A DNA stretch of 64,000 nucleotides from assembly GCF_030028105.1 (NCBI RefSeq), contig NC_092389.1, positions 7,675,180 through 7,739,179 of the forward strand, read 5' to 3'. Positions 28,620 through 58,890 of the stretch are shown in pieces. Source of the stretch: Mobula birostris. Taxonomy: Eukaryota. The first letter of the stretch is position 1, and the number at the start of each line of letters is the position of its first letter. The notes beneath the pieces were generated by a model. The model made no database searches. It was not told where the DNA came from and saw only the letters and a program-made list of their open reading frames with translations. A program made the position numbers and the translations under genes.

Positions 28620-29635
28620 TAAGACCATAAGGCCATAAGACATAGGAGCAGAATTCAGCCATTTGGCCCATCAAGTCTCACTGCTATTCCATCATGGCTG
28701 ATTTATTATTCCTTTCATACCCATCCTCCTGCCTTCTCCCTGTAACATTTGATTCCCTAACTAATGAAGAACCCATCAAACTCCTCTTTAAATATACTCA
28801 ACGACTTGGCTTCCACAGCTGTCTGTGGCAATGAATTCCATAGATTCACCATCCTCTGCCTAAAAAAATTCCAACTCATCTCTGCTAAATGGACGTCCCT
28901 CTATTCTGAGGTTGTGCCCCAGGGTCCTAGACTCACCCACAATAGGAACAATTCTCTGCATATCCACTCTATCTAGCCCTTTCAATATTTGGTAGGTTTC
29001 AATGAGATCTCCTCTCATTCTTCTGAACTCCAGCAAGTACAGGTCCAAAGCCATCCAATGTTCTTTACATCGTACATTAACTTTTTCATTCTCATGAACC
29101 TCCCCTGGACCCTCTCCAATGCCGGCATATTTTTACTTAGATAAGCAGCCCAGAACTGCTCACAATACTCCAAGTGTTTTCTTATAAAGCCTCAGCATCA
29201 CATCCCTGCTCTTGTATTCTATATCTCTTGAAATGAATGCTAACATTGCACTTGCCTTCCTCACCACTGACTCAACCTGCAAGTTAACCTTCAGGGAATC
29301 CTGCATGAGGACCCCAAGTCCCTTTAATTTTTTTAATTTTCTCCCCAATTAGAAAATAGTCTACACCTTTATTCCTTCTATGCATGACTATACATGACCT
29401 TGCATTATATTTATCTGCCACTTCTTTGCACATTCTCCCAATCTGTCCAAGTCCTTCTGCAGACTCCCTACATCCCCAACACTATGTGGACCTCCAACTA
29501 TCTTCATATCCTCTGCAAACTTGGCCACAAAGCCATCAATTCTGTCATCTAAATCATTGGCATGCAACGTAAGAAGAAGTGGTCCCAACACTGAACCCTG
29601 CAGAGCGCCACTAGTCACCTGCAGCCAATCTGAAA
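28620..29635 (-). mobile_element. CR1 LINE 3' portion
   Basis: Minus ORFs contain QGSVLGPLL, FVAKFAEDMK, LGVLMQDSLKVN and RMRGDLIETY; the tail is at the left. Confidence 0.9.
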
Positions 29636-29905
29636 GTGTAACAAGAACAAAGAAGACACTAGAGAGGAACATGCAGAGAGAGAATGAAGAAAGAGCATGC
29701 AGAGAAAGAGCCTAAGGAAAAGAGAGAGAGAACAAAGATGGTCTGGTCTTCTTATACTGGACCACCTTTGTTCAATTGATAACTGTAAATTCCATTGATA
29801 ATGTTAACCAATCGGATAGCCAGATTTATGTAATGTGAAACCAAGATGATTCCATAAAAATACAGAGGCAACTATAACCACCGAAAAACTCACTGAACAA
29901 TTAAA

Positions 29906-30896
29906 GCGACACACATCAAAGTTGCTGGTGAACGCAGCAGGCCAGGCAGCATCTCTAGGAAGAGGTACAGTCGACATTTCGGGCCAAGACCCTTCGTCAG
30001 GACTAACTGAAGGAAGAGCTAGTAAGAGATTTGAAAGTGGGAGGGGGAGGAGGAGATCCAAAATGATAGGAGAAGACAGGAGGGGGAGGGATGGAGCCAA
30101 GAGCTGGACAGGTGATTGGCAAAAGGGATATGAGAGGATCATGAGACAGGAGGCCCAGGGAGAAGGAAAAGGGGGAGGGGGGGGAAACCCAGAGGATGGG
30201 AAGGGGTATAGTCAGAGGGACAGAGGGAGAAAAAGGAGAGAGAGAGAAAGAATGTTTGTATATAAATAAATAAATAATGGATGGGGTACGAGGGGGAGGT
30301 TGGGCATTAGCCGAAGTTAGAGAAGTCAATGTTCATGCCATCAGGTTGGAGGCTACCCAGACGGAATACAAGGTGTTATTCCTCCAATCTGTGTGTGGCT
30401 TCTTGTTCCTCCAAACTTCTCTAACTTCCGTTAATGAACATTGATTTCTCTAACTTCCGCTAATACTCCACCTCCCCCTCATACCCCATCCGTTATTTAT
30501 TATATACACACATTCTTTCTCTCTCTCTCCTTTTTCTCCCTCGGTCCCTCTGACTATACCCCTTGCCCATCCTCTGGGTTTTTCCCCCCTCCCCCTTTTC
30601 CTTCTCCCTGGGCCTCCTGTCCCATGATCCTCTCGTATCCCCTTTTGCCAATCACCTGTCCAGCTCTTGGCTCCATCCCTCCCCCTCCTGTCTTCTCCTT
30701 TCATTTTGGATCTCCCCCTCCCCCTCCCACTTTCAAATCTCTTACTAGCTCTTCCTTCAGTTAGTCCTGACGAAGGGTCTTGGCCCGAAACGTCGACTAT
30801 ACCTCTTCCTAGAGATGCTACCTGGCCTGCTGCGTTCACCAGCAACTTTGATGTGTGTTGCTTGAATTTCCAGCATCTGCTGAATTCCTCGTGTTT
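29906..30896. mobile_element. Penelope-like element as a ~1-kb inverted repeat (two pLTR arms) with 14-bp TSD
   Basis: Arms about 29906-30392 (-) and 30416-30896 (+) are near-identical reverse complements. TSD actgaacaattaaa at 29892-29905 and 30897-30910. The minus arm holds the GIY-YIG C-terminal remnant HLVFRLGSLQPDGMNIDFSNF. Confidence 0.88.
30763..30798 (+). ncRNA. Minimal type I hammerhead-like ribozyme motif in a Penelope pLTR
   Basis: AGUC-CUGACGA-A-GGGU(CUUG)GCCC-GAAA-CG-UC-GACU: stem I, conserved core, stem II, GAAA, short palindromic stem III and a GUC cleavage triplet. Confidence 0.6.
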
Positions 30897-34124: not shown

Positions 34125-34800
34125 CATTGAGAAGTATAGTACAGATTCAGGCCCTTCGGCCCATCTAGTTCATGCCAAAGTAATTTAAACTGCCTACTCC
34201 CAATGGCCTGCACCGGGACCACAGCTCTCCATATCTCTACTATAGATGTACTTATCCAAATTTCTCTTAAACGTTGAAATCGAGCTCACATGGACCACTT
34301 GAGATGGCAGTTCATTCCACACTGTCACAACCCTCTGAGTGAAGAAGTTTTCCCTCATGTTCCCCTTAACTTCTCACCTTTCACCCTTAAGTCATGATCT
34401 CTAGTTATAGTCCCACCCAACCTCAGTGGAAAAAGCTTGCTTGCATTTACCCTATCTATACCCCTCATAATCTTGCATACCTCTATCAAATCTCCTCTCA
34501 ATCTTCTATGCTCTAAACAATACAATTCTAACCTATTCAATCTTTCCTTATAACTCAGGTCCTCCAGAACCAGCAACATTCTTGTAAATTTTCTCTGCAC
34601 TCTTCTAACCTTGTTTACATCTTTCCTGAGGGTAAGTGAACAAAACTGCACACAATACTCCAAATTAGCCCTCACCAATGTCTTATACAACTTCAGCATA
34701 ACATCCCATCTTCTGTACTCAATGCATTGATTTGTGAAGCCCAATGTGCCAAAAGCTTTCTCTATGACCCTATCTACCTGTGATGCCTCTTTCAATGAAT
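34125..34800 (-). mobile_element. CR1 LINE 3' portion
   Basis: ORF 34355-34795 contains LYKTLVRANLEYCVQF, VQRKFTRML and RRLRGDLIEV. Confidence 0.9.
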
Positions 34801-35396: not shown

Positions 35397-35430
35397 GTCC
35401 TGATGAAGGGTCTCGGCCTGAAACGTCGAC
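35397..35430 (+). ncRNA. Minimal type I hammerhead-like motif in a short pLTR fragment (35391-35530)
   Basis: GUC-CUGAUGA-AGG(GUCUCGG)CCU-GAAA-CG-UC-GAC with an intact core. Confidence 0.6.
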
Positions 35431-37136
35431 TGCACCTCTTCCTAGAGATGCTGCCTGGCCTGCTGCGTTCACCAGCAACTTTTATGTGTGTTGCTTGAAT
35501 TTCCAGCATTTGCAGAATTCCTGTTGTTTGACCTAAAAAATTGCCAGATTCAAGTGGCGTGGCACCTGCTACTGAAAACCAAGGAGCTTTTGGAAAAATA
35601 TAGAAGTAACTGTACTGTAACTGCCAGAAAATTCACTGAACAATTGCATGTAAATAGATGATTACACAAAAATACAAGCAAGCATAGAAAATACAAGAAA
35701 AATAACTATTCTACATCAGAATCCAACAGGTAGTGAATTCAAATACCTCTGACAATCTCAGAAACACTCGACAACTAGCCATATACTCAGATTGTCCTTG
35801 AAGAATGATTTAGGCAATGCCAGAATAAGGTTCAGTCAGGGGTGATTTTGCAATCATGTACCTCATCCGCTTCACATTAAAAGTCTCCTGGTAAGTGACT
35901 CACTGTTTCTATTGGGACCATCTCAACGAGATAACATTTCTGTTTTCTTGACAGTTTATGAAATCTCTTAGGTCAAATGTTTAGTGTCTTTAAAACTAAT
36001 GGATGATGATCTATTTAAATATTAATCAGCATCCAACCACAGATGCAGATCTATCAAGGCAAACAATATAGAAAGAAAGTTGCTTAGCCTGTGTGTATCT
36101 TGTTTCCAGCGCAATCAACGCTGTAATTGTTTGGCGTTTTGTAAAATTGCAGCTGCAATCCAGATTAAGATTCAGAGCCTTGTAGAATGATTTCACTCTT
36201 GAGACTAATTCATTTAAGAACATTAAATCTCTCAGTGATCTGCAATTCCACAATGTGAGTCTCAGGATGTCTCTTCTGGCAATGGAGAGTCAAGTTCACT
36301 CACAAGTTTACATTGTGCAATTGGCTACTTTTCGTACCAGTACTGAATAGATTAGAGCTGAACTTTATTTGTCACACATGCATTGAAATGCATCATTTGC
36401 ATCAATATCCAACACAGTCTGAGATGTGCTGGGGGCAGCCCGCAAATGTTGCATGCTTCTGGCATCAATATGGCATGCACATAACTTGGACCACAAGACC
36501 ATAAGACATAGGAGCAGAATTAGGCCATTGGCCCAACAAGTCTGCTCCACCATTCAATCATGGCTGATCCTATTTTTCTCCTCTTCGACCCCAGTTCCTG
36601 GCATCCTCCCTGTAACCTTTGATACCATGTCCAATCAAGAACCTATCAATCTCTGCCTTAAATACATCCAACGACCTGGCCTCCACAGCTGCCTGTGGCA
36701 ACAAATTCCACTAATTCACCACCCTTTGACTAAAGAATTTCTCCGTATCTCTGTTTTGAAAGAGCGCCCCTCTATCCTGAGGCTGTACCCTCTTGTCCTA
36801 GACCCTCCCATGGGAAACATCCTTTCCATATCTACTCTGTCTAGGCCTTTCAACATTCGAAAGGTTTCAATGAGATCCCCCCTCATCCTTTTGAATTCCA
36901 GCGAGTACAGACCCAGAGCCATCAAACGTTCCGCATATGATAACCTGGAACCATCTTTGTGAACGTCCTCTGGGACTCTCTCCAATGCCAGCACATCTTT
37001 TCCAAGATGAGGGGCCCAAAACTGTTTACAATACTCAAGGTGAGGCCTCACCGGTGCCTTATAAAGCCTCAGCATCACATCCTTGTTCTTATATTCCAGA
37101 CCCCTTGAAATGAATGCTAACATGATGCATTATATT

Positions 37137-37946
37137 TGTCATGATCTGCTCCGTGAAGATCGTATTCCAGTTCACGGTCTGGTCCGTCGATTCCTTATTT
37201 CGGGTTTTCCTGTTTTCCTTTGTTCCATTGGGTGCCTTAATTGAGGCACCTGGTTCTTGCTTTGGGCTGGCACATAAATACCTCTCAAACCAAGGATTCC
37301 CTGCTGGCCTGTTCCCTACCCTTCTGAAGCCTTGCGTGCATCTCTGTCAACTGCTGGAGTGAGGCTGGAGCCTTGCCATACCAAGATAAGGAACTATCTC
37401 TTTGTGTCCCTGTGTTTAGTGTCTGTGTCAAAGAAGAGTCCTGGCCCTAGGTCCTGCTCCCAAGGAGGGGTCCTAACCCTGTGTAAAGTCCTGTTCCCAA
37501 GGAGGGGATCTGGCTCTGTGTTGTGTGTTCCAAGTTCCAGGTGGTGTGTTCCAGTCCTGTCCAAGTCAAGGCTTTGTGTTCTTGTCCAGTCCAGGAGTCC
37601 CTTGTCAAGTCCTGTAGCCTAGCCATGTCCAGTCCTGTAGCCATGTCTTGTCCTTGCCCAGATCTGGGGTCTGAGCCTGAGTCAAGACCCAGGTTCTGGG
37701 TCCCTGTCCAGTCTCTGGCTCGGAGTCATAGCTCAGGCTCCTAGTTCCAAGTTCCTTGTCCTGGTCCTGCTTTCCTAGTCTTAGTCTTAGCCCAGGCCCA
37801 GTGTCCCTGTCTTGTCCAGGGCCTGTCTCAATGCCCAGTGTCATTTCTTCCTTACTCACCTTGCTATCTCAATAAACCTAGTCCTGTTCCTAGTACTTCA
37901 GTGTGTGTCTTGCATTTGGATCTGCTCCCAATGCCCCCTTATGACA
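37137..37946 (+). mobile_element. 5' LTR of a miniature Gypsy/chromovirus-type element
   Basis: TGTCA...TGACA termini, ataaata TATA-like box at 37274 and caataaa near 37870. Followed by gaacaacccagtcc...gacccag, which resembles an internal start. Confidence 0.82.
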
Positions 37947-38062
37947 GAACAACCCAGTCCTACATAGACCCAGTGATGCAGACACTGTCATTTAACTCTC
38001 GCCATCCTGTTGAATACCCCCCACCTGCCTAGGTCGTTCATAGTCCAGGAAAGCCTGTTAGG

Positions 38063-39199
38063 TGTCACAAGGTGTGTGCTGGGAATGGGCCCAAATGCAA
38101 GACGGACACTGAAGTACAAGGAACAGGACTAGGATGAAGGACCTGGGCTAGGACATGGACAAGAAACAGGGAATCTGGACAAGGAACTATGAACTCAGAG
38201 CCTGGCTTGAACTCCAAGCCAGAGACTGGACAAGGACCCAGAACCTGGGTCTTGCCTCGGGCTCGGACCCCAGAACTAGGCAAGGACATGACACGGCTAT
38301 GGGACTGGACGAGGCTGCAGGCTGGGGTCTTGGGATGCGGAGGCTGATAACTCCAAGACTGGAGCTTGGAGACATACTGGGAACTGTACATCAACATAGA
38401 GCCGAGACTTATCCTTTGAAAAGCCGGGACTCATCTTTAACACGACACCAACATGAGACTGGACAGTGCATAGACATAGAGCCGGGACTTATCCTTAGAC
38501 AAGCTAGGATTCAACTTTATCTCCACACCAAGGTGGGACAGGTCCATCCGTCGGGTAACAGCAGAACGGCAGGACTTACCCAACAGAGGCAAAGACAAGA
38601 CATCCCCCCACAGGGCAACAGCAGAATGACCTGACTTACCCCACAGAGGCGAGGACAAGAGGGGACAGATCCAACCGTAGGGTAATGGCAGAATGGCCTG
38701 ACCTACCCCATGGAGGCAAGGACAAGAAGAGACAAACACCAAAGAATGACAGACAGTTCCACATCTGCATTGGGGTTGCTCCAAGTCACAGTTACAGCTA
38801 GCAACCTCAGCTGGCTATGGAAACAGCCGGATCCCTACCTAGCTCAGAGTGGCTGACAGCCACTCAGCTGGCCCAGTAAACAGCCGAATCCATACCACAA
38901 AGACAGCTCCGACTACCGACAGCAAGGCTTCATGAAGCAATGGTTCTCCAACGCAGCCTAAGGATGGCAAGTGGCTGCTCTAGCCTTCCACCAGCAGGTT
39001 GCTCCCAGGGAAATCTTGACAAGACAAACTAGCCGCCCACACTCGACCCCAAGGCTACTTGTATTCCAAGCCCCAAGACAGGAATCAGGTGCCTATGATT
39101 AACCCAACGGAAACAAGGGACAGCTGGAAGACCTAGAGTCCTGAGTCTACGGACCGGACCGTGAACCAGATTGCAGACTTCACAGAATGGACTATGACA
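38063..39199 (-). mobile_element. Solo LTR of a related subfamily inserted antisense in the mini element, 5-bp TSD
   Basis: TGTCA...TGACA termini flanked by ttagg (38058-38062 and 39200-39204). Homologous to LTR1 in reverse, with three 60-67-bp tandem units at about 38536-38727. Confidence 0.85.
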
Positions 39200-39375
39200 T
39201 TAGGCCACCAGGAGGCTCCCATAGAGGGGGAGTACTGTCACAGTCCGGTCTGTCGATTCCTTATTCTGGGTTTTCCTGTTTTCCCTTGTTCCATTGGGTG
39301 GTTTAATTGAGGCATCTGATTCTTGTTTTGGGCTGGCACACAAATACCTCTCAAACCAAGGATTCCCTGCTGGAC

Positions 39376-40810
39376 GCCCTACAGGTAGAAATGGGAATAA
39401 TGCCTTTGGAACTAAGAAGGATGCAACTGATGGCAAACTACTGGGCTAACTTGCAGGGGCACAATGATTCTCACCCTACTAAAGGAGTGTTGCAGGAGTG
39501 CTGGGAAAATGGGAGATTTCAGAGGCATACCCTTAGTCGGGTAGGGAGTGATATGCGAAAGAATGTGGAGTATTTGATCTGAGGATAATTCCTTCAGTAG
39601 TTTATCTGGTTGTAGCTCCATGGAAGCTTGTATGGCCTGACATAGACTGGCATTTGTTAGAGGTAAAAAGGAAAGAAAGATATAAAACAGATTTGGTAAA
39701 TGCATTTAACTGTCATGTGATGGAAAAGTATAGTGATTATACTCACGTTTATACGGATGGTGCGAAGGAACCTGAAACAGGAGTGACAGGGTTTGGGGTG
39801 GTTATACCAGCAAAAGAAATTGAAATCAGCAGAAGAACATCTAATAAGTTAGGGGTGTTTACAGTGGAGATGCTGGCAGTGTTGGTTGCGTTGCAATGGG
39901 TGCAGAAAGCCAGACAAGCCAAAGTATTGATATGTTCAGATTCATCCTCAGTTCTAGCAAGTTTAAGGTCTTTTCACACAAACAGTCGGCAAGATGTACT
40001 TTATGAAGTCCTTCAGTTAGTTACAAGAATTGCAAATCAGGGAGGTCAGGTAAAATTTCTATGGGTTCCAGCACATGTAGGAGTGAAGGGGAATGAGAGG
40101 GTGGATGAGTTGGCAAAGAGGGTGTTAAAGAAAGAAAATGTGGAAATGCACATTAGTATCAGTAAAGCAGAGGTTAAGTGTGTAATCTGGGAAAAAGTCA
40201 ACCGAATGTGGCAAGAAAGATGGGACAGGGAGGGGAAAGGGAGGCACTTATATCAAATACAAAAGAGTGTTGCAGTTACTAGGGTAGGTAATGGAAACAG
40301 AAGAGAGGAAATTGTGTGGACTAGGTTAAGGCTGGGGCATTGTGCATTAAACAAAACATTGAAAATGATAGGGAAACACCAGACAGGATTGTGTGAGGAA
40401 TGTCAGGAAGAGGAGTCAGTAGAACATGTAGTTTTGTGTTGCAGGAAGTATGGGATACAGAGAGAGATGATGAGAAATAAATTAAGGGAGTTGGGGATGC
40501 AGGAATTCACATTAAAAGAGTTGCTGGGCATGGGTGAGAGAGCACAAGTCCGGGTATTTTTAGCGTTTTTAAGGGGTACAGGGGTTTTTTATAGAATATG
40601 ACGAATAAACAGGAATAGGATACTAGGATGGTCAAAGATGGGAGGGTGAAGTGTAGGGGTGTGTGTGTGTGTGTGTGCGCGCGCACGCACGCGTGCGCGA
40701 TTGGGTGAAGGGATTTAGAATGTATGTCTAGTGCACACTATGGAGCAGAGGGTGGCGGTAATGCACCATTAAGCTGGATTCCAACCGCCGTAAAACAAGA
40801 TACAGAGAGA
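39376..40810 (+). mobile_element. Nimb/I-clade LINE, 5'-truncated, encoding RNase H and a zinc knuckle
   Basis: Open frame 39552-40601 has YTDGAK, VEMLAV, ICSDS and WVPAHVGVKGNERVDELAK (RNase H) and CEEC-x7-H-x3-C. The 3'UTR has ggtggcggtaatgcacc...ccaaccgcc and an (AG)n tail. 15-bp TSD gattccctgctggac at 39361-39375 and 40811-40825. Confidence 0.85.
40659..40698. repeat. (GT)n/(GC)n alternating purine-pyrimidine tract
   Basis: gtgtgtgtgtgtgtgtgtgcgcgcgcacgcacgcgtgcgcg inside the Nimb 3'UTR. Confidence 0.9.
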
Positions 40811-42699
40811 GATTCCCTGCTGGACTGTTCCCTTCCCCTTCTGCCTGAAGCATTGCCTGCATCCCTGTCAAGTTCAACTGCTGGAGTGACACTGGAGCCT
40901 TGCCATGCCAAGATAAGGAACTATCTATTGTTGAGTTTAGAACTGTCTCTTTGTGCCCCTGTGCTTTAGTGTCTGTGTCAAAGAAGAGTCCTGGCCCTAG
41001 GTCCTGTTCCCAAGGAGGGGTCCTGACTCTGTGCAAAGCCTTGGCCCCAGGTCTTGTTCCCAAGGAGGGGTCACAATATCACAAGACAAAGGAGCAGAAG
41101 TAGGTCATTTGGCCCATCAAGTCTGCTCCACCACTCCACCATGAGCTAAACTATTCTCCCATCTAGTTCCAATTTCCGGCTTTTTCCCCATATCCCTTGA
41201 TACCTTGACTAATTAGATGTGTCCCTTGGGTCCCAGCTCTGTTCTGTGTTCCAGGTGCTGTGTTCCAGTCCTGTCCAAGTCAAGGCTTCATGTTCTCGTC
41301 CAGTCCGGGAGTCCCTTGTCCAGTCCTGTAGCCTAGCCACGTCCAGTCCTGTAGCCAAGTCTTGTCCTCGCCTAGATCCGGGGTCCGAGCCTGAGTCAAG
41401 ACCCAGGTTCCGGGTCCCTGTCCAGTCTCTGGCTTGGAGTCATAGCTCAGGCTCCTAGTTCCAGTTCCTTGTCCTGGTCCTGCTTTCCTAGTCTTAGTTG
41501 TAGCCCAGGCCCAGTGTCCTTGTCTCGTCCAGGGCCTGTGTCAATGTCCAGCGTCGTTTCTTCCTTGCTCACCTTGCTATCTCGATAAACCTAGTCCTGT
41601 TCCTAGTACTTCATTGTCTGTGTCTTGCATTTGGGTCTGCTCTCAACGCCTTCCTCACCACTGACTCAACCTGCAAGCTAACCTTCAGGGTGTTCTGCAC
41701 AATGACTCCCAAGTCCCTCTGCATCTCAGATTCCTGGACTTACTCCCCGTTTAGAAAATAGTCTGCACAGTTATTTCTACTACCAAAGTGCATGACCATG
41801 CATTTTCCAACATTGTATTTCATTTGCCACTTTCATGCCTATTCTCCTAATCTAAGTCCTTCTGCATCCTACCTGCCCCTCCACCAATCTTCGTATCATC
41901 TGCAAACTTGGCAACAAAGCCATCTATTCCATCATCTAAATCATTTATATACAACATAAAAAGTAGCGGTCCTAACACCGACCCCTGCAGAACACCACTA
42001 GTCACTGGAGATGGCTAATTTACTAACCTTCACTAATCCAGCACCCAGAGGAAACCCATGGTCAAGGGAAGAATGAACAAGCTCTTTGCAGACAGTGGCG
42101 GGAATAGAACCTCAATTGCTGATGCTATAAAGTGGTATGCTAACCACTGCACTACTGTTGTGTCCATACTGGGGCTCCTTGGGTTACAGATGACCTTCTG
42201 AAGGAAATCTGACAGAAAAATTCTTCCATAGCATTTATCAATAATAATAAAATGTTATAATAATAACATATTTATTGTGTTCATTAATGACTGAGTACAG
42301 TATATATTGCATTAGTTTAATTATGAGTGGTCTTCAGGTGATTATTCAATGAAATAAAGGAATTATAGCAGATCTATGTCAAGTGATGTGATCAGGATTA
42401 CTGTAGAAAACTAATGCTTCTGACTTATGGAAAAATCAATTAATAGACAGTTCTCAGGAACGGAACCATTATGTAATCTAGGGACTACCTGTATTTTCTC
42501 AGTGTCCTTAAGGCTAGCAAGTAATGTAACCTGATCATTTCATTTGCAAAAGAACTTGCATTCCTTCTTACACATCTAGTTCCTCTGGTTCTAACGGACC
42601 CGCTGCAGAGAATGGGGTGATTGTTCATGTCTCCAAAGATATTCTCATCGTCCCTTGGCCCAGAATATTATGCAAGGTTTGCACACTAAAATAAAGGTC

Positions 42700-54599: not shown

Positions 54600-55680
54600 A
54601 GGAATCTGAATCCAAATAAGAATCACGTTTAATGTCACTGACATATGTTGTGAAATACATTAACTTAGCGGCAGCAGAACAATGCAATACACAATAATAT
54701 AGAAATAAATAAATCAATCAATTACAGCAAGTATATATATGTATATTAAATAGATTATACTTTATACTTTATTGTCACCGAACAATTGATACTAGAACAT
54801 ACAATCATCACAGTGATATTTGATTCTGCGCTTCCTGCTCCCTGGATTACAAATCGATAATAAATATTAAAAATTTAAATTATAAATCATAAATAGAAAA
54901 TAGAAAAATGGAAAGTAAGGTAGTGCAAAGAAACCGAGAGGCAGGTCCGGGTATTTGGAGGGCACGGCCCAGATCCAGGTCAGGATCCGTTCAGCAGTCT
55001 TATCACAATAGAAAAAATTATTAAAAATAGTGCAAAGCAGAAATAATAAAAAAGTCAGGTAGTGTTCATGGGTTCAATGTCCATTTAGGAATCAGGTGGT
55101 AGAGGGGAAGAAGCTGTTCCTGAATCATTGAGTGTGTGCCTTCAGGCTTCTGTACTTCTTCCCTGACGATAACAATGAGAAGAGGGCAAGTCCTGGATGG
55201 TGAGGGTCCTTAGTAGTAGGCGCTGCCTTCCTGATGCACCTCTCCTTGAAGATGTCTTGGATTCTACGGAAGCTAGTACTCAAGAAGGAGCTGACTAATT
55301 TTATAACTCTCTGTAGCTTCTTTCAATCCTGTGCACTAGCCCCCCCCCCCCACCACCACCCCACGCCAGACAGTGATGCAGCCTGTCAGAATGCTCTCCA
55401 CGGTACATCTGTAGAAGTTTTTGAGTGTTTTAGTGACAAACCAAATCTCTTCGAACTCCCAATGAAGTATAGCCACTGTCTTGCCTGCTTTCTAGATGCA
55501 TCGATATGTTGACGCCAGGTTAGTCATCAGAAATCTTGACACTCAAGAACTAGAAATTGCTCACTCTCTCTGCTTCTGATCCCTCTATGAGGATTGGTTT
55601 TTGCTCCCTCATCTTACCCTTCCTGAAGTCCACACTCAGCTCTTTAGTCTTACTGATGTTGAGTGCTCCTGTATGCCCTC
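54600..55680 (-). mobile_element. Rex1/Babar-type LINE 3' portion with a nested tail of another family (about 54760-55010)
   Basis: Homologous to 63114-64000 and about 57940-58610. Confidence 0.75.
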
Positions 55681-58682: not shown

Positions 58683-58890
58683 GCCAGCTGGTGGTGTAGT
58701 GGCATCAGCACTGGACTCGGAATCAAGTGGTCCCGGGTTCGAATCCAGCCAGCTCCTTGGACGCTTTCCATCCATGCTGGGTTGAGTGTTGAGCTAGCAA
58801 CTCGGCCTCATTAAAAAAACAGATAAAAATGCAAAAGAACTGACAAGGTTGCTTCCCAATGCGCCACAAGGCGTGAAGAGGAACAACAAA
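58683..58890 (+). mobile_element. tRNA-derived SINE with RTE-type 3' end
   Basis: A box tggtgtagtgg and B box ggttcgaatcc, followed by a non-tRNA body and a gcgccacaaggcgtgaagaggaacaacaa tail. Confidence 0.7.

What the first reader, a model, noticed from the sequence alone, without database searches (positions are those of the whole stretch)
37137..41650. Miniature LTR retroelement with a self-priming signature (TRIM-like Tf1/sushi derivative)
Seen: two ~810-bp LTRs. With the nested insertions removed, only ~147 bp separate them (37947-38062 plus 39205-39235), ending in a PPT (agagggggagtac|TGT). There is no tRNA-type TGG PBS. Instead, the 12 nt after the 5' LTR (gaacaacccagt, 37947-37958) pair 10/12, including one G-U, with gctggcctgttc (37303-37314). 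That site lies 29 nt downstream of the TATA-like ataaata, where the transcript should start. Established: Tf1/sushi chromoviruses prime reverse transcription by annealing the first ~11 nt of their RNA to the PBS. Inference: this is a non-coding, self-priming mini element that kept its cis signals, possibly an undescribed non-autonomous family in elasmobranchs. The LTRs differ by roughly 10% plus indels, so it is not very young.
Basis: partly seen in the sequence, partly recalled or inferred. Interest (0 to 1): 0.7.

Follow-up and report, generated by a model that had tools for sequence, protein, structure and literature searches.

The report
Decayed protein-less two-LTR retroelement in a ray
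This is an old, broken copy of a jumping element made of two 810-base repeats around only 147 non-coding bases. It lacks the usual tRNA primer site and may instead prime its own copying, but in this copy that signal is imperfect and unproven.

Summary
Two direct LTRs (TGTCA...TGACA, 91% identical, K2P 0.094) flank a 147-bp non-coding core that ends in a polypurine tract. Three later insertions interrupt the element: an inverted related solo LTR, a LINE 3' piece and a repeat fragment. Both outer flanks join into one continuous LINE copy, so the pair arrived in a single insertion.

The core contains no TGG, so there is no tRNA-type primer site. The 10/12 complementarity exists and is the best such site in the LTR. 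It is weak in itself: 39% of shuffled LTRs give an equal match somewhere. Its position is more telling. It starts 30 nt after the only TATA-like motif in the LTR, which random genomic 12-mers achieve only 1.8% of the time.

The two central mismatches cannot be explained by a single recent mutation, and the transcript start is unmapped. Public contigs of three coded species hold the LTR at very high copy number and the core at roughly 4-5 copies. No second short-core copy could be read.

TRIM membership fails on size. Tf1/sushi membership is untestable because there is no coding sequence. Earlier notes on this genome report similar mini-elements.

Verdict: partly supported, moderate interest.

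The parts
37137..37946 (+). 5' LTR, 810 bp, termini TGTCA...TGACA
   Evidence: It aligns to the 3' LTR at 91.2% identity. Its 3' boundary is confirmed by the related inverted LTR. It is also confirmed by public contigs that end ...TGACA and then diverge (loose end at 37938).
37273..37280 (+). Only TATA-like motif in the LTR (CATAAATA)
   Evidence: It is the single match to TATAWAW with at most 1 mismatch in the 810 bp. In the inverted related LTR, the majority letter in public contigs (39061 G>A, about 99% of depth) turns the corresponding motif into TATAAG. The correspondence rests on the three-way alignment.
37303..37314 (+). Putative transcript start and self-primer (GCTGGCCTGTTC)
   Evidence: It pairs 10/12 with 37947-37958. 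It is the only site of 10/12 or better in the LTR and the most stable 12-mer duplex, at -11.3 to -12.3 kcal/mol. The start of transcription is inferred, not mapped.
37871..37876 (+). AATAAA, putative polyadenylation signal
   Evidence: Read directly from the sequence. It is GATAAA in the 3' LTR and absent from the aligned part of the related LTR, so its role is an inference.
37947..37958 (+). PBS-like 12 nt directly after the 5' LTR (GAACAACCCAGT)
   Evidence: There is no TGG here or anywhere in the core.
37947..38062 (+). Core, first part (116 bp)
   Evidence: It is unique within the window. Its fold is not more stable than shuffles, z = 0.43. Public contigs cover it at low multiples of single-copy depth, with at least 2 variants.
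38063..39199 (-). Nested solo LTR of a related, very abundant family, in inverted orientation
   Evidence: Termini are TGTCA...TGACA, flanked by TTAGG at 38058-38062 and 39200-39204. It is 63% identical overall to the host LTR, with blocks of 83-93%. Contig depth over it is very high.
39205..39235 (+). Core, second part (31 bp), with the polypurine tract AGAGGGGGAG at 39223-39232
   Evidence: The tract lies 3 nt before the start of the 3' LTR.
39236..39375 (+). 3' LTR, first piece (U3 with the TATA-like motif mutated to ACAAATA; 33-nt deletion after TGTCA)
39376..40810 (+). Nested 3' fragment of a LINE with an RNase H domain
   Evidence: Pfam RNase_H, E = 6.8e-17, in an open 315-aa frame. A 15-bp duplication lies at 39361-39375 and 40811-40825.
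40811..41072 (+). 3' LTR, second piece
41073..41229 (+). Nested fragment (~157 bp, boundaries approximate) of a dispersed repeat
   Evidence: Similar pieces occur at 36492, 1578, 15363, 28634 and other places in the window.
41230..41648 (+). 3' LTR, third piece, lacking the last ~11 nt
   Evidence: The junction with the flank is shown.
36716..37136 (-). Left flank: the LINE copy into which the element inserted. The right flank continues from about 41649.
   Evidence: The joined flanks align continuously to an empty paralogue at 29181-29323.

Best explanation
This is an old copy of a protein-less, non-autonomous LTR retroelement. It consists of two 810-bp LTRs around a 147-bp core that keeps only the two cis signals next to the LTRs: a primer-site-like 12-mer and a polypurine tract. 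It inserted once into a LINE.

Afterwards it received three nested insertions and lost about 33 nt at the start and about 11 nt at the end of its 3' LTR. Its LTR belongs to a superfamily that is very abundant in at least three related species. Its own core is low-copy.

Inferred mechanism:
- RNA polymerase II starts about 30 nt after the LTR's single TATA-like box.
- The transcript is packaged and reverse-transcribed by the proteins of an unidentified autonomous LTR retrotransposon.
- First-strand synthesis is primed not by a tRNA but by the transcript's own first ~12 nt folding back on the site just after the 5' LTR, as in Tf1/sushi elements.
- In this copy the pairing is interrupted by two central mismatches.
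For: Shown:
- LTR pair at 91.2% identity, K2P 0.094.
- One insertion event, because the joined flanks match an empty paralogue.
- The core is 147 bp with a PPT and no TGG, and no ORF of note.
- The nested inserts have their own duplications.
- The LTRs are very high copy in contigs of three coded organisms. Core place 38016 carries 251, 43 and 24 depth units in the three DNA runs, with 2 variants in two of them. Single-copy depth is about 54 in the first run, estimated at place 37336.

For self-priming:
- There is only one site of 10/12 or better in the LTR. It starts 30 nt after the only TATA-like motif, and 1.8% of random genomic 12-mers do as well.
- The TATA position is kept in the related family's majority sequence.
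- The minimum-energy fold of the putative R-U5-PBS RNA contains the pairing.

Established knowledge: Tf1/sushi elements, including vertebrate ones, are held to self-prime (PMC4600332, PMC6317226).

Leads, not tested here: an earlier follow-up on this genome (s1-145316) reports exact 12/12 complementarity at TATA+30 in the majority sequence of an abundant mini-element. About ten further notes describe similar elements.
Against: - The pairing itself is weak. 39% of shuffled LTRs hold a 10/12 site somewhere, and 61% hold an equally stable duplex.
- The two mismatches are adjacent and central. One partner base is C in both LTRs. The other differs between the LTRs (C or A), and neither pairs. Restoring a perfect duplex therefore needs at least 3 changes in 36 bases at about 4.7% divergence per lineage.
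- The transcript start, the poly(A) site and an R region of about 590 nt are inferred only.
- The own target-site duplication is unreadable.
- No second copy with the same short core was seen. The joint skipping the nested LTR is not among the listed joints (407 unlisted).
- No autonomous partner was found.
Confidence: 0.55

Rival explanations
1. This is a one-off remnant. A full-length LTR retrotransposon or endogenous retrovirus inserted here and later lost nearly all of its interior in a single deletion. The leader and PPT stubs were left by accident. The complementarity is a coincidence.
For: - The locus has suffered other deletions: 33 nt at the start of the 3' LTR and about 11 nt at its end.
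- No second short-core copy was read.
- The core's multi-copy signal would also be produced by leaders of full-length elements.
- The duplex strength is at chance level.
Against: - The deletion would have had to spare exactly the PBS side and 31 nt with the PPT.
- The nested solo LTR has a clean 5-bp duplication inside the already short core.
- The position-specific match has p about 0.02.
- Several untested notes describe two-LTR elements with 150-177-bp interiors elsewhere in this genome.
Confidence: 0.2
2. It is a real non-autonomous mini-element, but it is not self-primed. The primer is something else, such as an internal or half tRNA or another small RNA, or the primer site has decayed. 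The match at TATA+30 is chance.
For: - There are two central mismatches and only 5 contiguous pairs on each side.
- Animal TRIMs without a recognisable PBS are on record (PMC6934838).
- Half-tRNA priming is known in other LTR elements (PMC6317226).
Against: - There is no TGG anywhere in the core, and no complementarity to the one tRNA in the window.
- The best site in the whole LTR coincides with the expected transcript start.
Confidence: 0.2

Closest known systems
TRIM (terminal-repeat retrotransposons in miniature), including animal and fish families such as biv-TRIM and Helenus
   Same: Two direct terminal repeats, a short non-coding interior ending in a PPT, and dependence on another element's proteins. 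Solo repeats are frequent. Some animal TRIMs also lack a recognisable tRNA primer site (PMC6934838, PMC10886601).
   Different: - TRIMs are under 1 kb with repeats of 100-250 bp. Here the repeats are 810 bp and the element is 1.77 kb, so nearly all of it is LTR.
- Vertebrate Helenus uses tRNA primers and carries a tRNA-like pol III promoter in its repeats. Rfam finds no small-RNA-like part here.
Tf1/sushi group of Ty3/Gypsy chromoviruses (Tf1, Tj1, sushi-ichi)
   Same: There is no tRNA primer site. The sequence just after the 5' LTR is complementary to the presumed first bases of the transcript (PMC4600332, PMC6317226).
   Different: - Those elements are autonomous, with gag-pol and an integrase chromodomain. 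Here nothing is coded, so relatedness cannot be judged.
- The pairing here is 10/12 with a 2-nt internal mismatch.
- The presumed R+U5 is about 640 nt long.
Mini two-LTR elements with giant LTRs noted elsewhere in this genome by this scan (s1-145316 and others)
   Same: Same genome and same layout: long LTRs, an interior of about 150 bp, no tRNA site, and complementarity starting about 30 nt after a TATA box.
   Different: Sequence relationship to those copies could not be checked here. In this copy the complementarity is imperfect.

Membership tests
LTR retrotransposon (general) | Two direct LTRs with TG...CA termini, arising from one insertion | tested here: met
   TGTCA...TGACA termini, 91.2% identity, and flanks that join into one LINE copy.
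LTR retrotransposon (general) | Target-site duplication flanking the element | tested here: inconclusive
   The 3' junction is deleted. The nested related solo LTR does have a 5-bp duplication, TTAGG.
LTR retrotransposon (general) | Polypurine tract directly upstream of the 3' LTR | tested here: met
   AGAGGGGGAG at 39223-39232, 3 nt before the LTR.
LTR retrotransposon (general) | Primer site complementary to the 3' end of a tRNA (TGG...) | tested here: not met
   No TGG in the 147-bp core.
TRIM | Total length under 1 kb with terminal repeats of 100-250 bp (PMC6934838) | tested here: not met
   LTRs of 810 bp. The element is 1,767 bp without the nested inserts.
TRIM | Short non-coding interior bounded by a PBS and a PPT | tested here: inconclusive
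   The 147-bp interior and the PPT are present. The PBS is not of the tRNA type.
TRIM / non-autonomous LTR family | Many dispersed copies sharing the same short interior | tested here: inconclusive
   The core is covered at about 4-5 times single-copy depth with 2 variants in public contigs, but no second short copy was read. No further copy lies in the window.
Tf1/sushi chromoviruses | Reverse transcriptase and integrase (chromodomain) that group with Tf1/sushi | not testable with these tools
   The element has no coding sequence, and no autonomous partner is in the window.
Tf1/sushi chromoviruses | The first ~11 nt of the transcript are fully complementary to the site after the 5' LTR | tested here: inconclusive
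   10/12 with two central mismatches. The position fits TATA+30 with p about 0.02. The transcript start is not mapped.

The most novel reading that the evidence does not exclude
Rays may carry a superfamily of protein-less retroelements that are almost entirely LTR and that prime reverse transcription with their own 5' end. In that case the primer site would be re-copied from the primer in each cycle, so it would co-vary with the transcript start between subfamilies. This copy would represent a second LTR subfamily with the same TATA+30 geometry. It would be the first non-autonomous self-priming LTR element family described in vertebrates.
Probability: 0.4. Interest if true: 0.6.

Novelty: new variant of a known kind. 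Interest (0 to 1): 0.4.

Why it matters
Self-priming is known from autonomous Tf1/sushi elements, and miniature LTR elements are known mostly from plants and a few animals. A vertebrate mini-element that combines the two would show that the cis requirements for self-primed reverse transcription fit into about 150 bp plus the LTR. It would also give natural co-variation data on that RNA duplex. This particular copy is decayed and adds only supporting evidence of moderate strength.

Tried and rejected
- Fetching other copies through predicted proteins: the 64-aa ORF across the LTR end and core found no candidate.
- Exact 19-mer across the LTR/core junction in metagenome contigs: two hits, both without any extended similarity, so they are chance matches.
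- Rfam scan of 36900-41900: nothing near any family threshold, so no tRNA-like, 5S-like or ribozyme part.
- Fold of the core: not more stable than shuffles.
- A second LTR pair in the window for an independent test: none found.
- Complementarity of the core to the window's one tRNA (Pro-CGG): none.
- Earlier findings searched by sequence and by nearby place: blank.
- Reverse orientation of the element: rejected. The purine tract, AATAAA and the TATA-like motif fit only the + strand.
- Contig depths of the possible RNA run: no usable pattern. They cannot show a transcript start.
Full report
**Observation**

The region was read directly and compared with itself.

- The 5' LTR is 37137-37946.
- The 3' LTR begins at 39236 and runs to about 41648 in three pieces.
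- The two LTRs align over 765 positions at 91.2% identity, with 50 transitions, 17 transversions, K2P 0.094 and 12 gap runs.
- Both LTRs begin TGTCA, and the 5' LTR ends TGACA.
- A third, related LTR lies inverted inside the element at 38063-39199. It has the same termini and is flanked by TTAGG on both sides (38058-38062 and 39200-39204). It is therefore a later solo-LTR insertion.
- The core ends in AGAGGGGGAG, then TAC, directly before the 3' LTR.

The 3' LTR carries two further insertions:

- A LINE 3' fragment at 39376-40810. It has an open 315-aa frame, a Pfam RNase H domain with E = 6.8e-17, and a 15-bp duplication.
- A fragment of about 157 bp of a dispersed repeat, at about 41073-41229.

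**One insertion event**

The sequence left of 37137 and right of about 41648 aligns as one continuous stretch to an empty paralogue of the same LINE at 29181-29323. The two LTRs therefore arrived together.

The end of the 3' LTR (about 11 nt) and whatever duplication followed it are missing. The element's own target-site duplication cannot be read.

**Copy number elsewhere**

No other copy of the LTR or core lies in the window. Public runs were found for the stretch, and contigs of four runs were laid on 37290-39373 at 80% likeness. The three DNA runs come from three coded organisms.

- Both LTR families are very highly repeated in all three. One 70-nt block at 38200-38269 reaches a summed depth above two million in one run.
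- Contigs that reach the LTR end read ...TGACA and then diverge (agreement 0.4). This confirms the LTR boundary and suggests that most copies are solo LTRs.
- The core has the lowest depth of the stretch.
- At place 37336 the window's own letter accounts for about 54 depth units of 726 in the best run. I take 54 as roughly single-copy depth.
- On that scale, core place 38016 (251 units, two variants) corresponds to about 4-5 copies. The subfamily-specific start of R corresponds to about 13 copies.

These are rough figures; the tool warns that summed depth is not a copy number. They speak against 'the core occurs only here', but they do not show that the other copies are short. The joint that would skip the nested LTR is not among the joints listed, and 407 joints were not shown.

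**Primer site**

The core contains no TGG at all, so there is no canonical tRNA 3'-end site, not even a displaced one.

The 12 nt after the LTR (GAACAACCCAGT) pair 10/12 with GCTGGCCTGTTC at 37303-37314. That is two blocks of five pairs, the outermost pair of one block being G-U, separated by two mismatches. It is the only site of 10/12 or better in the LTR and the most stable 12-mer duplex.

As a bare match it is unremarkable. 39% of dinucleotide-preserving shuffles of the LTR contain such a site, and 61% contain an equally stable duplex.

The mechanistic claim is narrower, because the site must lie at the transcript start.

- The LTR has exactly one match to TATAWAW with at most one mismatch, at 37273.
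- In the related inverted LTR, the majority letter of public contigs at 39061 turns the corresponding motif into TATAAG. This supports that position as a promoter element.
- With the start window fixed at 25-35 nt after the motif, only 1.8% of 118,450 genomic 12-mers from the rest of the window pair 10/12 or better there.
- The real site starts at +30.

This is moderate evidence in favour.

Against it:

- The two mismatches are adjacent and central.
- One R position is C in both LTRs. The other is C in one and A in the other, and neither pairs.
- A once-perfect duplex therefore needs at least three changes in the 36 bases concerned, at about 4.7% divergence per lineage. That is possible but not expected.
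- The poly(A) signal AATAAA (37871-37876) is not kept in the related LTR.
- The implied R of about 590 nt is long.
- All of U3/R/U5 is inference.

**Earlier notes of this scan**

After my first reading, look-ups showed about a dozen notes on this same genome describing miniature two-LTR elements with interiors of 150-177 bp and a self-priming signature.

One follow-up (s1-145316) states that, in the majority sequence of an abundant protein-less element, the 12 nt after the 5' LTR are exactly complementary to 12 nt starting 30 nt after the TATA box. This made me run the position-specific test and raised my estimate.

I could not see those sequences, so they remain leads. The only part tested here is the geometry in this copy, which agrees.

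**What it is**

The most likely reading is a decayed copy of a non-autonomous, protein-less LTR retroelement. Its interior keeps only the primer-site side and the PPT, and an unidentified autonomous element would have mobilised it in trans. Priming by the transcript's own 5' end is plausible but not shown.

There are two rivals:

- A one-off internal deletion of a full-length element.
- A real mini-element that uses some other primer.

**Comparison with known kinds**

- TRIM: the layout is TRIM-like, but the size criteria are not met (PMC6934838). Fish TRIMs of the Helenus type use tRNA primers and tRNA-like promoters (PMC10886601), and nothing of that kind is found here.
- Tf1/sushi: these elements, including vertebrate ones, are held to self-prime (PMC4600332, PMC6317226). 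Membership cannot be tested without coding sequence.

I therefore file it as a new variant of a known kind, with moderate interest. The family-level idea is the interesting part, and this copy is a weak, degraded witness to it.

**Limits**

- The 151 N in the window lie outside the region and were not touched.

Noticed in passing
window 39376-40810: LINE 3' fragment with an uninterrupted 315-aa frame holding an RNase H domain, a (TG)n/(GC)n tract in its tail and a 15-bp target duplication. It sits exactly inside the 12-nt putative transcript-start site of the 3' LTR.
   Followed up: partly
window 38200-38316 and 37621-37726: A ~100-nt block shared by the two LTR families reaches far higher summed contig depth than the rest of either LTR (over 2 million in one run). 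It may be shared by many LTR families or by a separate repeat.
   Followed up: no
window 29899-30336 and 30434-30868: A 440-bp inverted repeat at 94% identity with a ~100-bp spacer. A 105-133-bp part of it is repeated at 35397-35529. It could be a foldback or a terminal-inverted-repeat element.
   Followed up: no
window 58685-58756: A tRNA-Pro(CGG)-like gene called by ARAGORN. It lies inside a region with three ~600-bp repeats at 55043, 58030 and 63239 (77-81% identity). It may be a tRNA-derived SINE head rather than a working gene.
   Followed up: no
window 36716-37123 (-) and 34355-34795 (-): Two ORFs resembling the tail of a LINE reverse transcriptase (motif ...LEYC.QFW...), with no Pfam hit. 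They belong to the abundant LINE family that hosts the element. An empty paralogue of the insertion site is at 29181-29323.
   Followed up: partly
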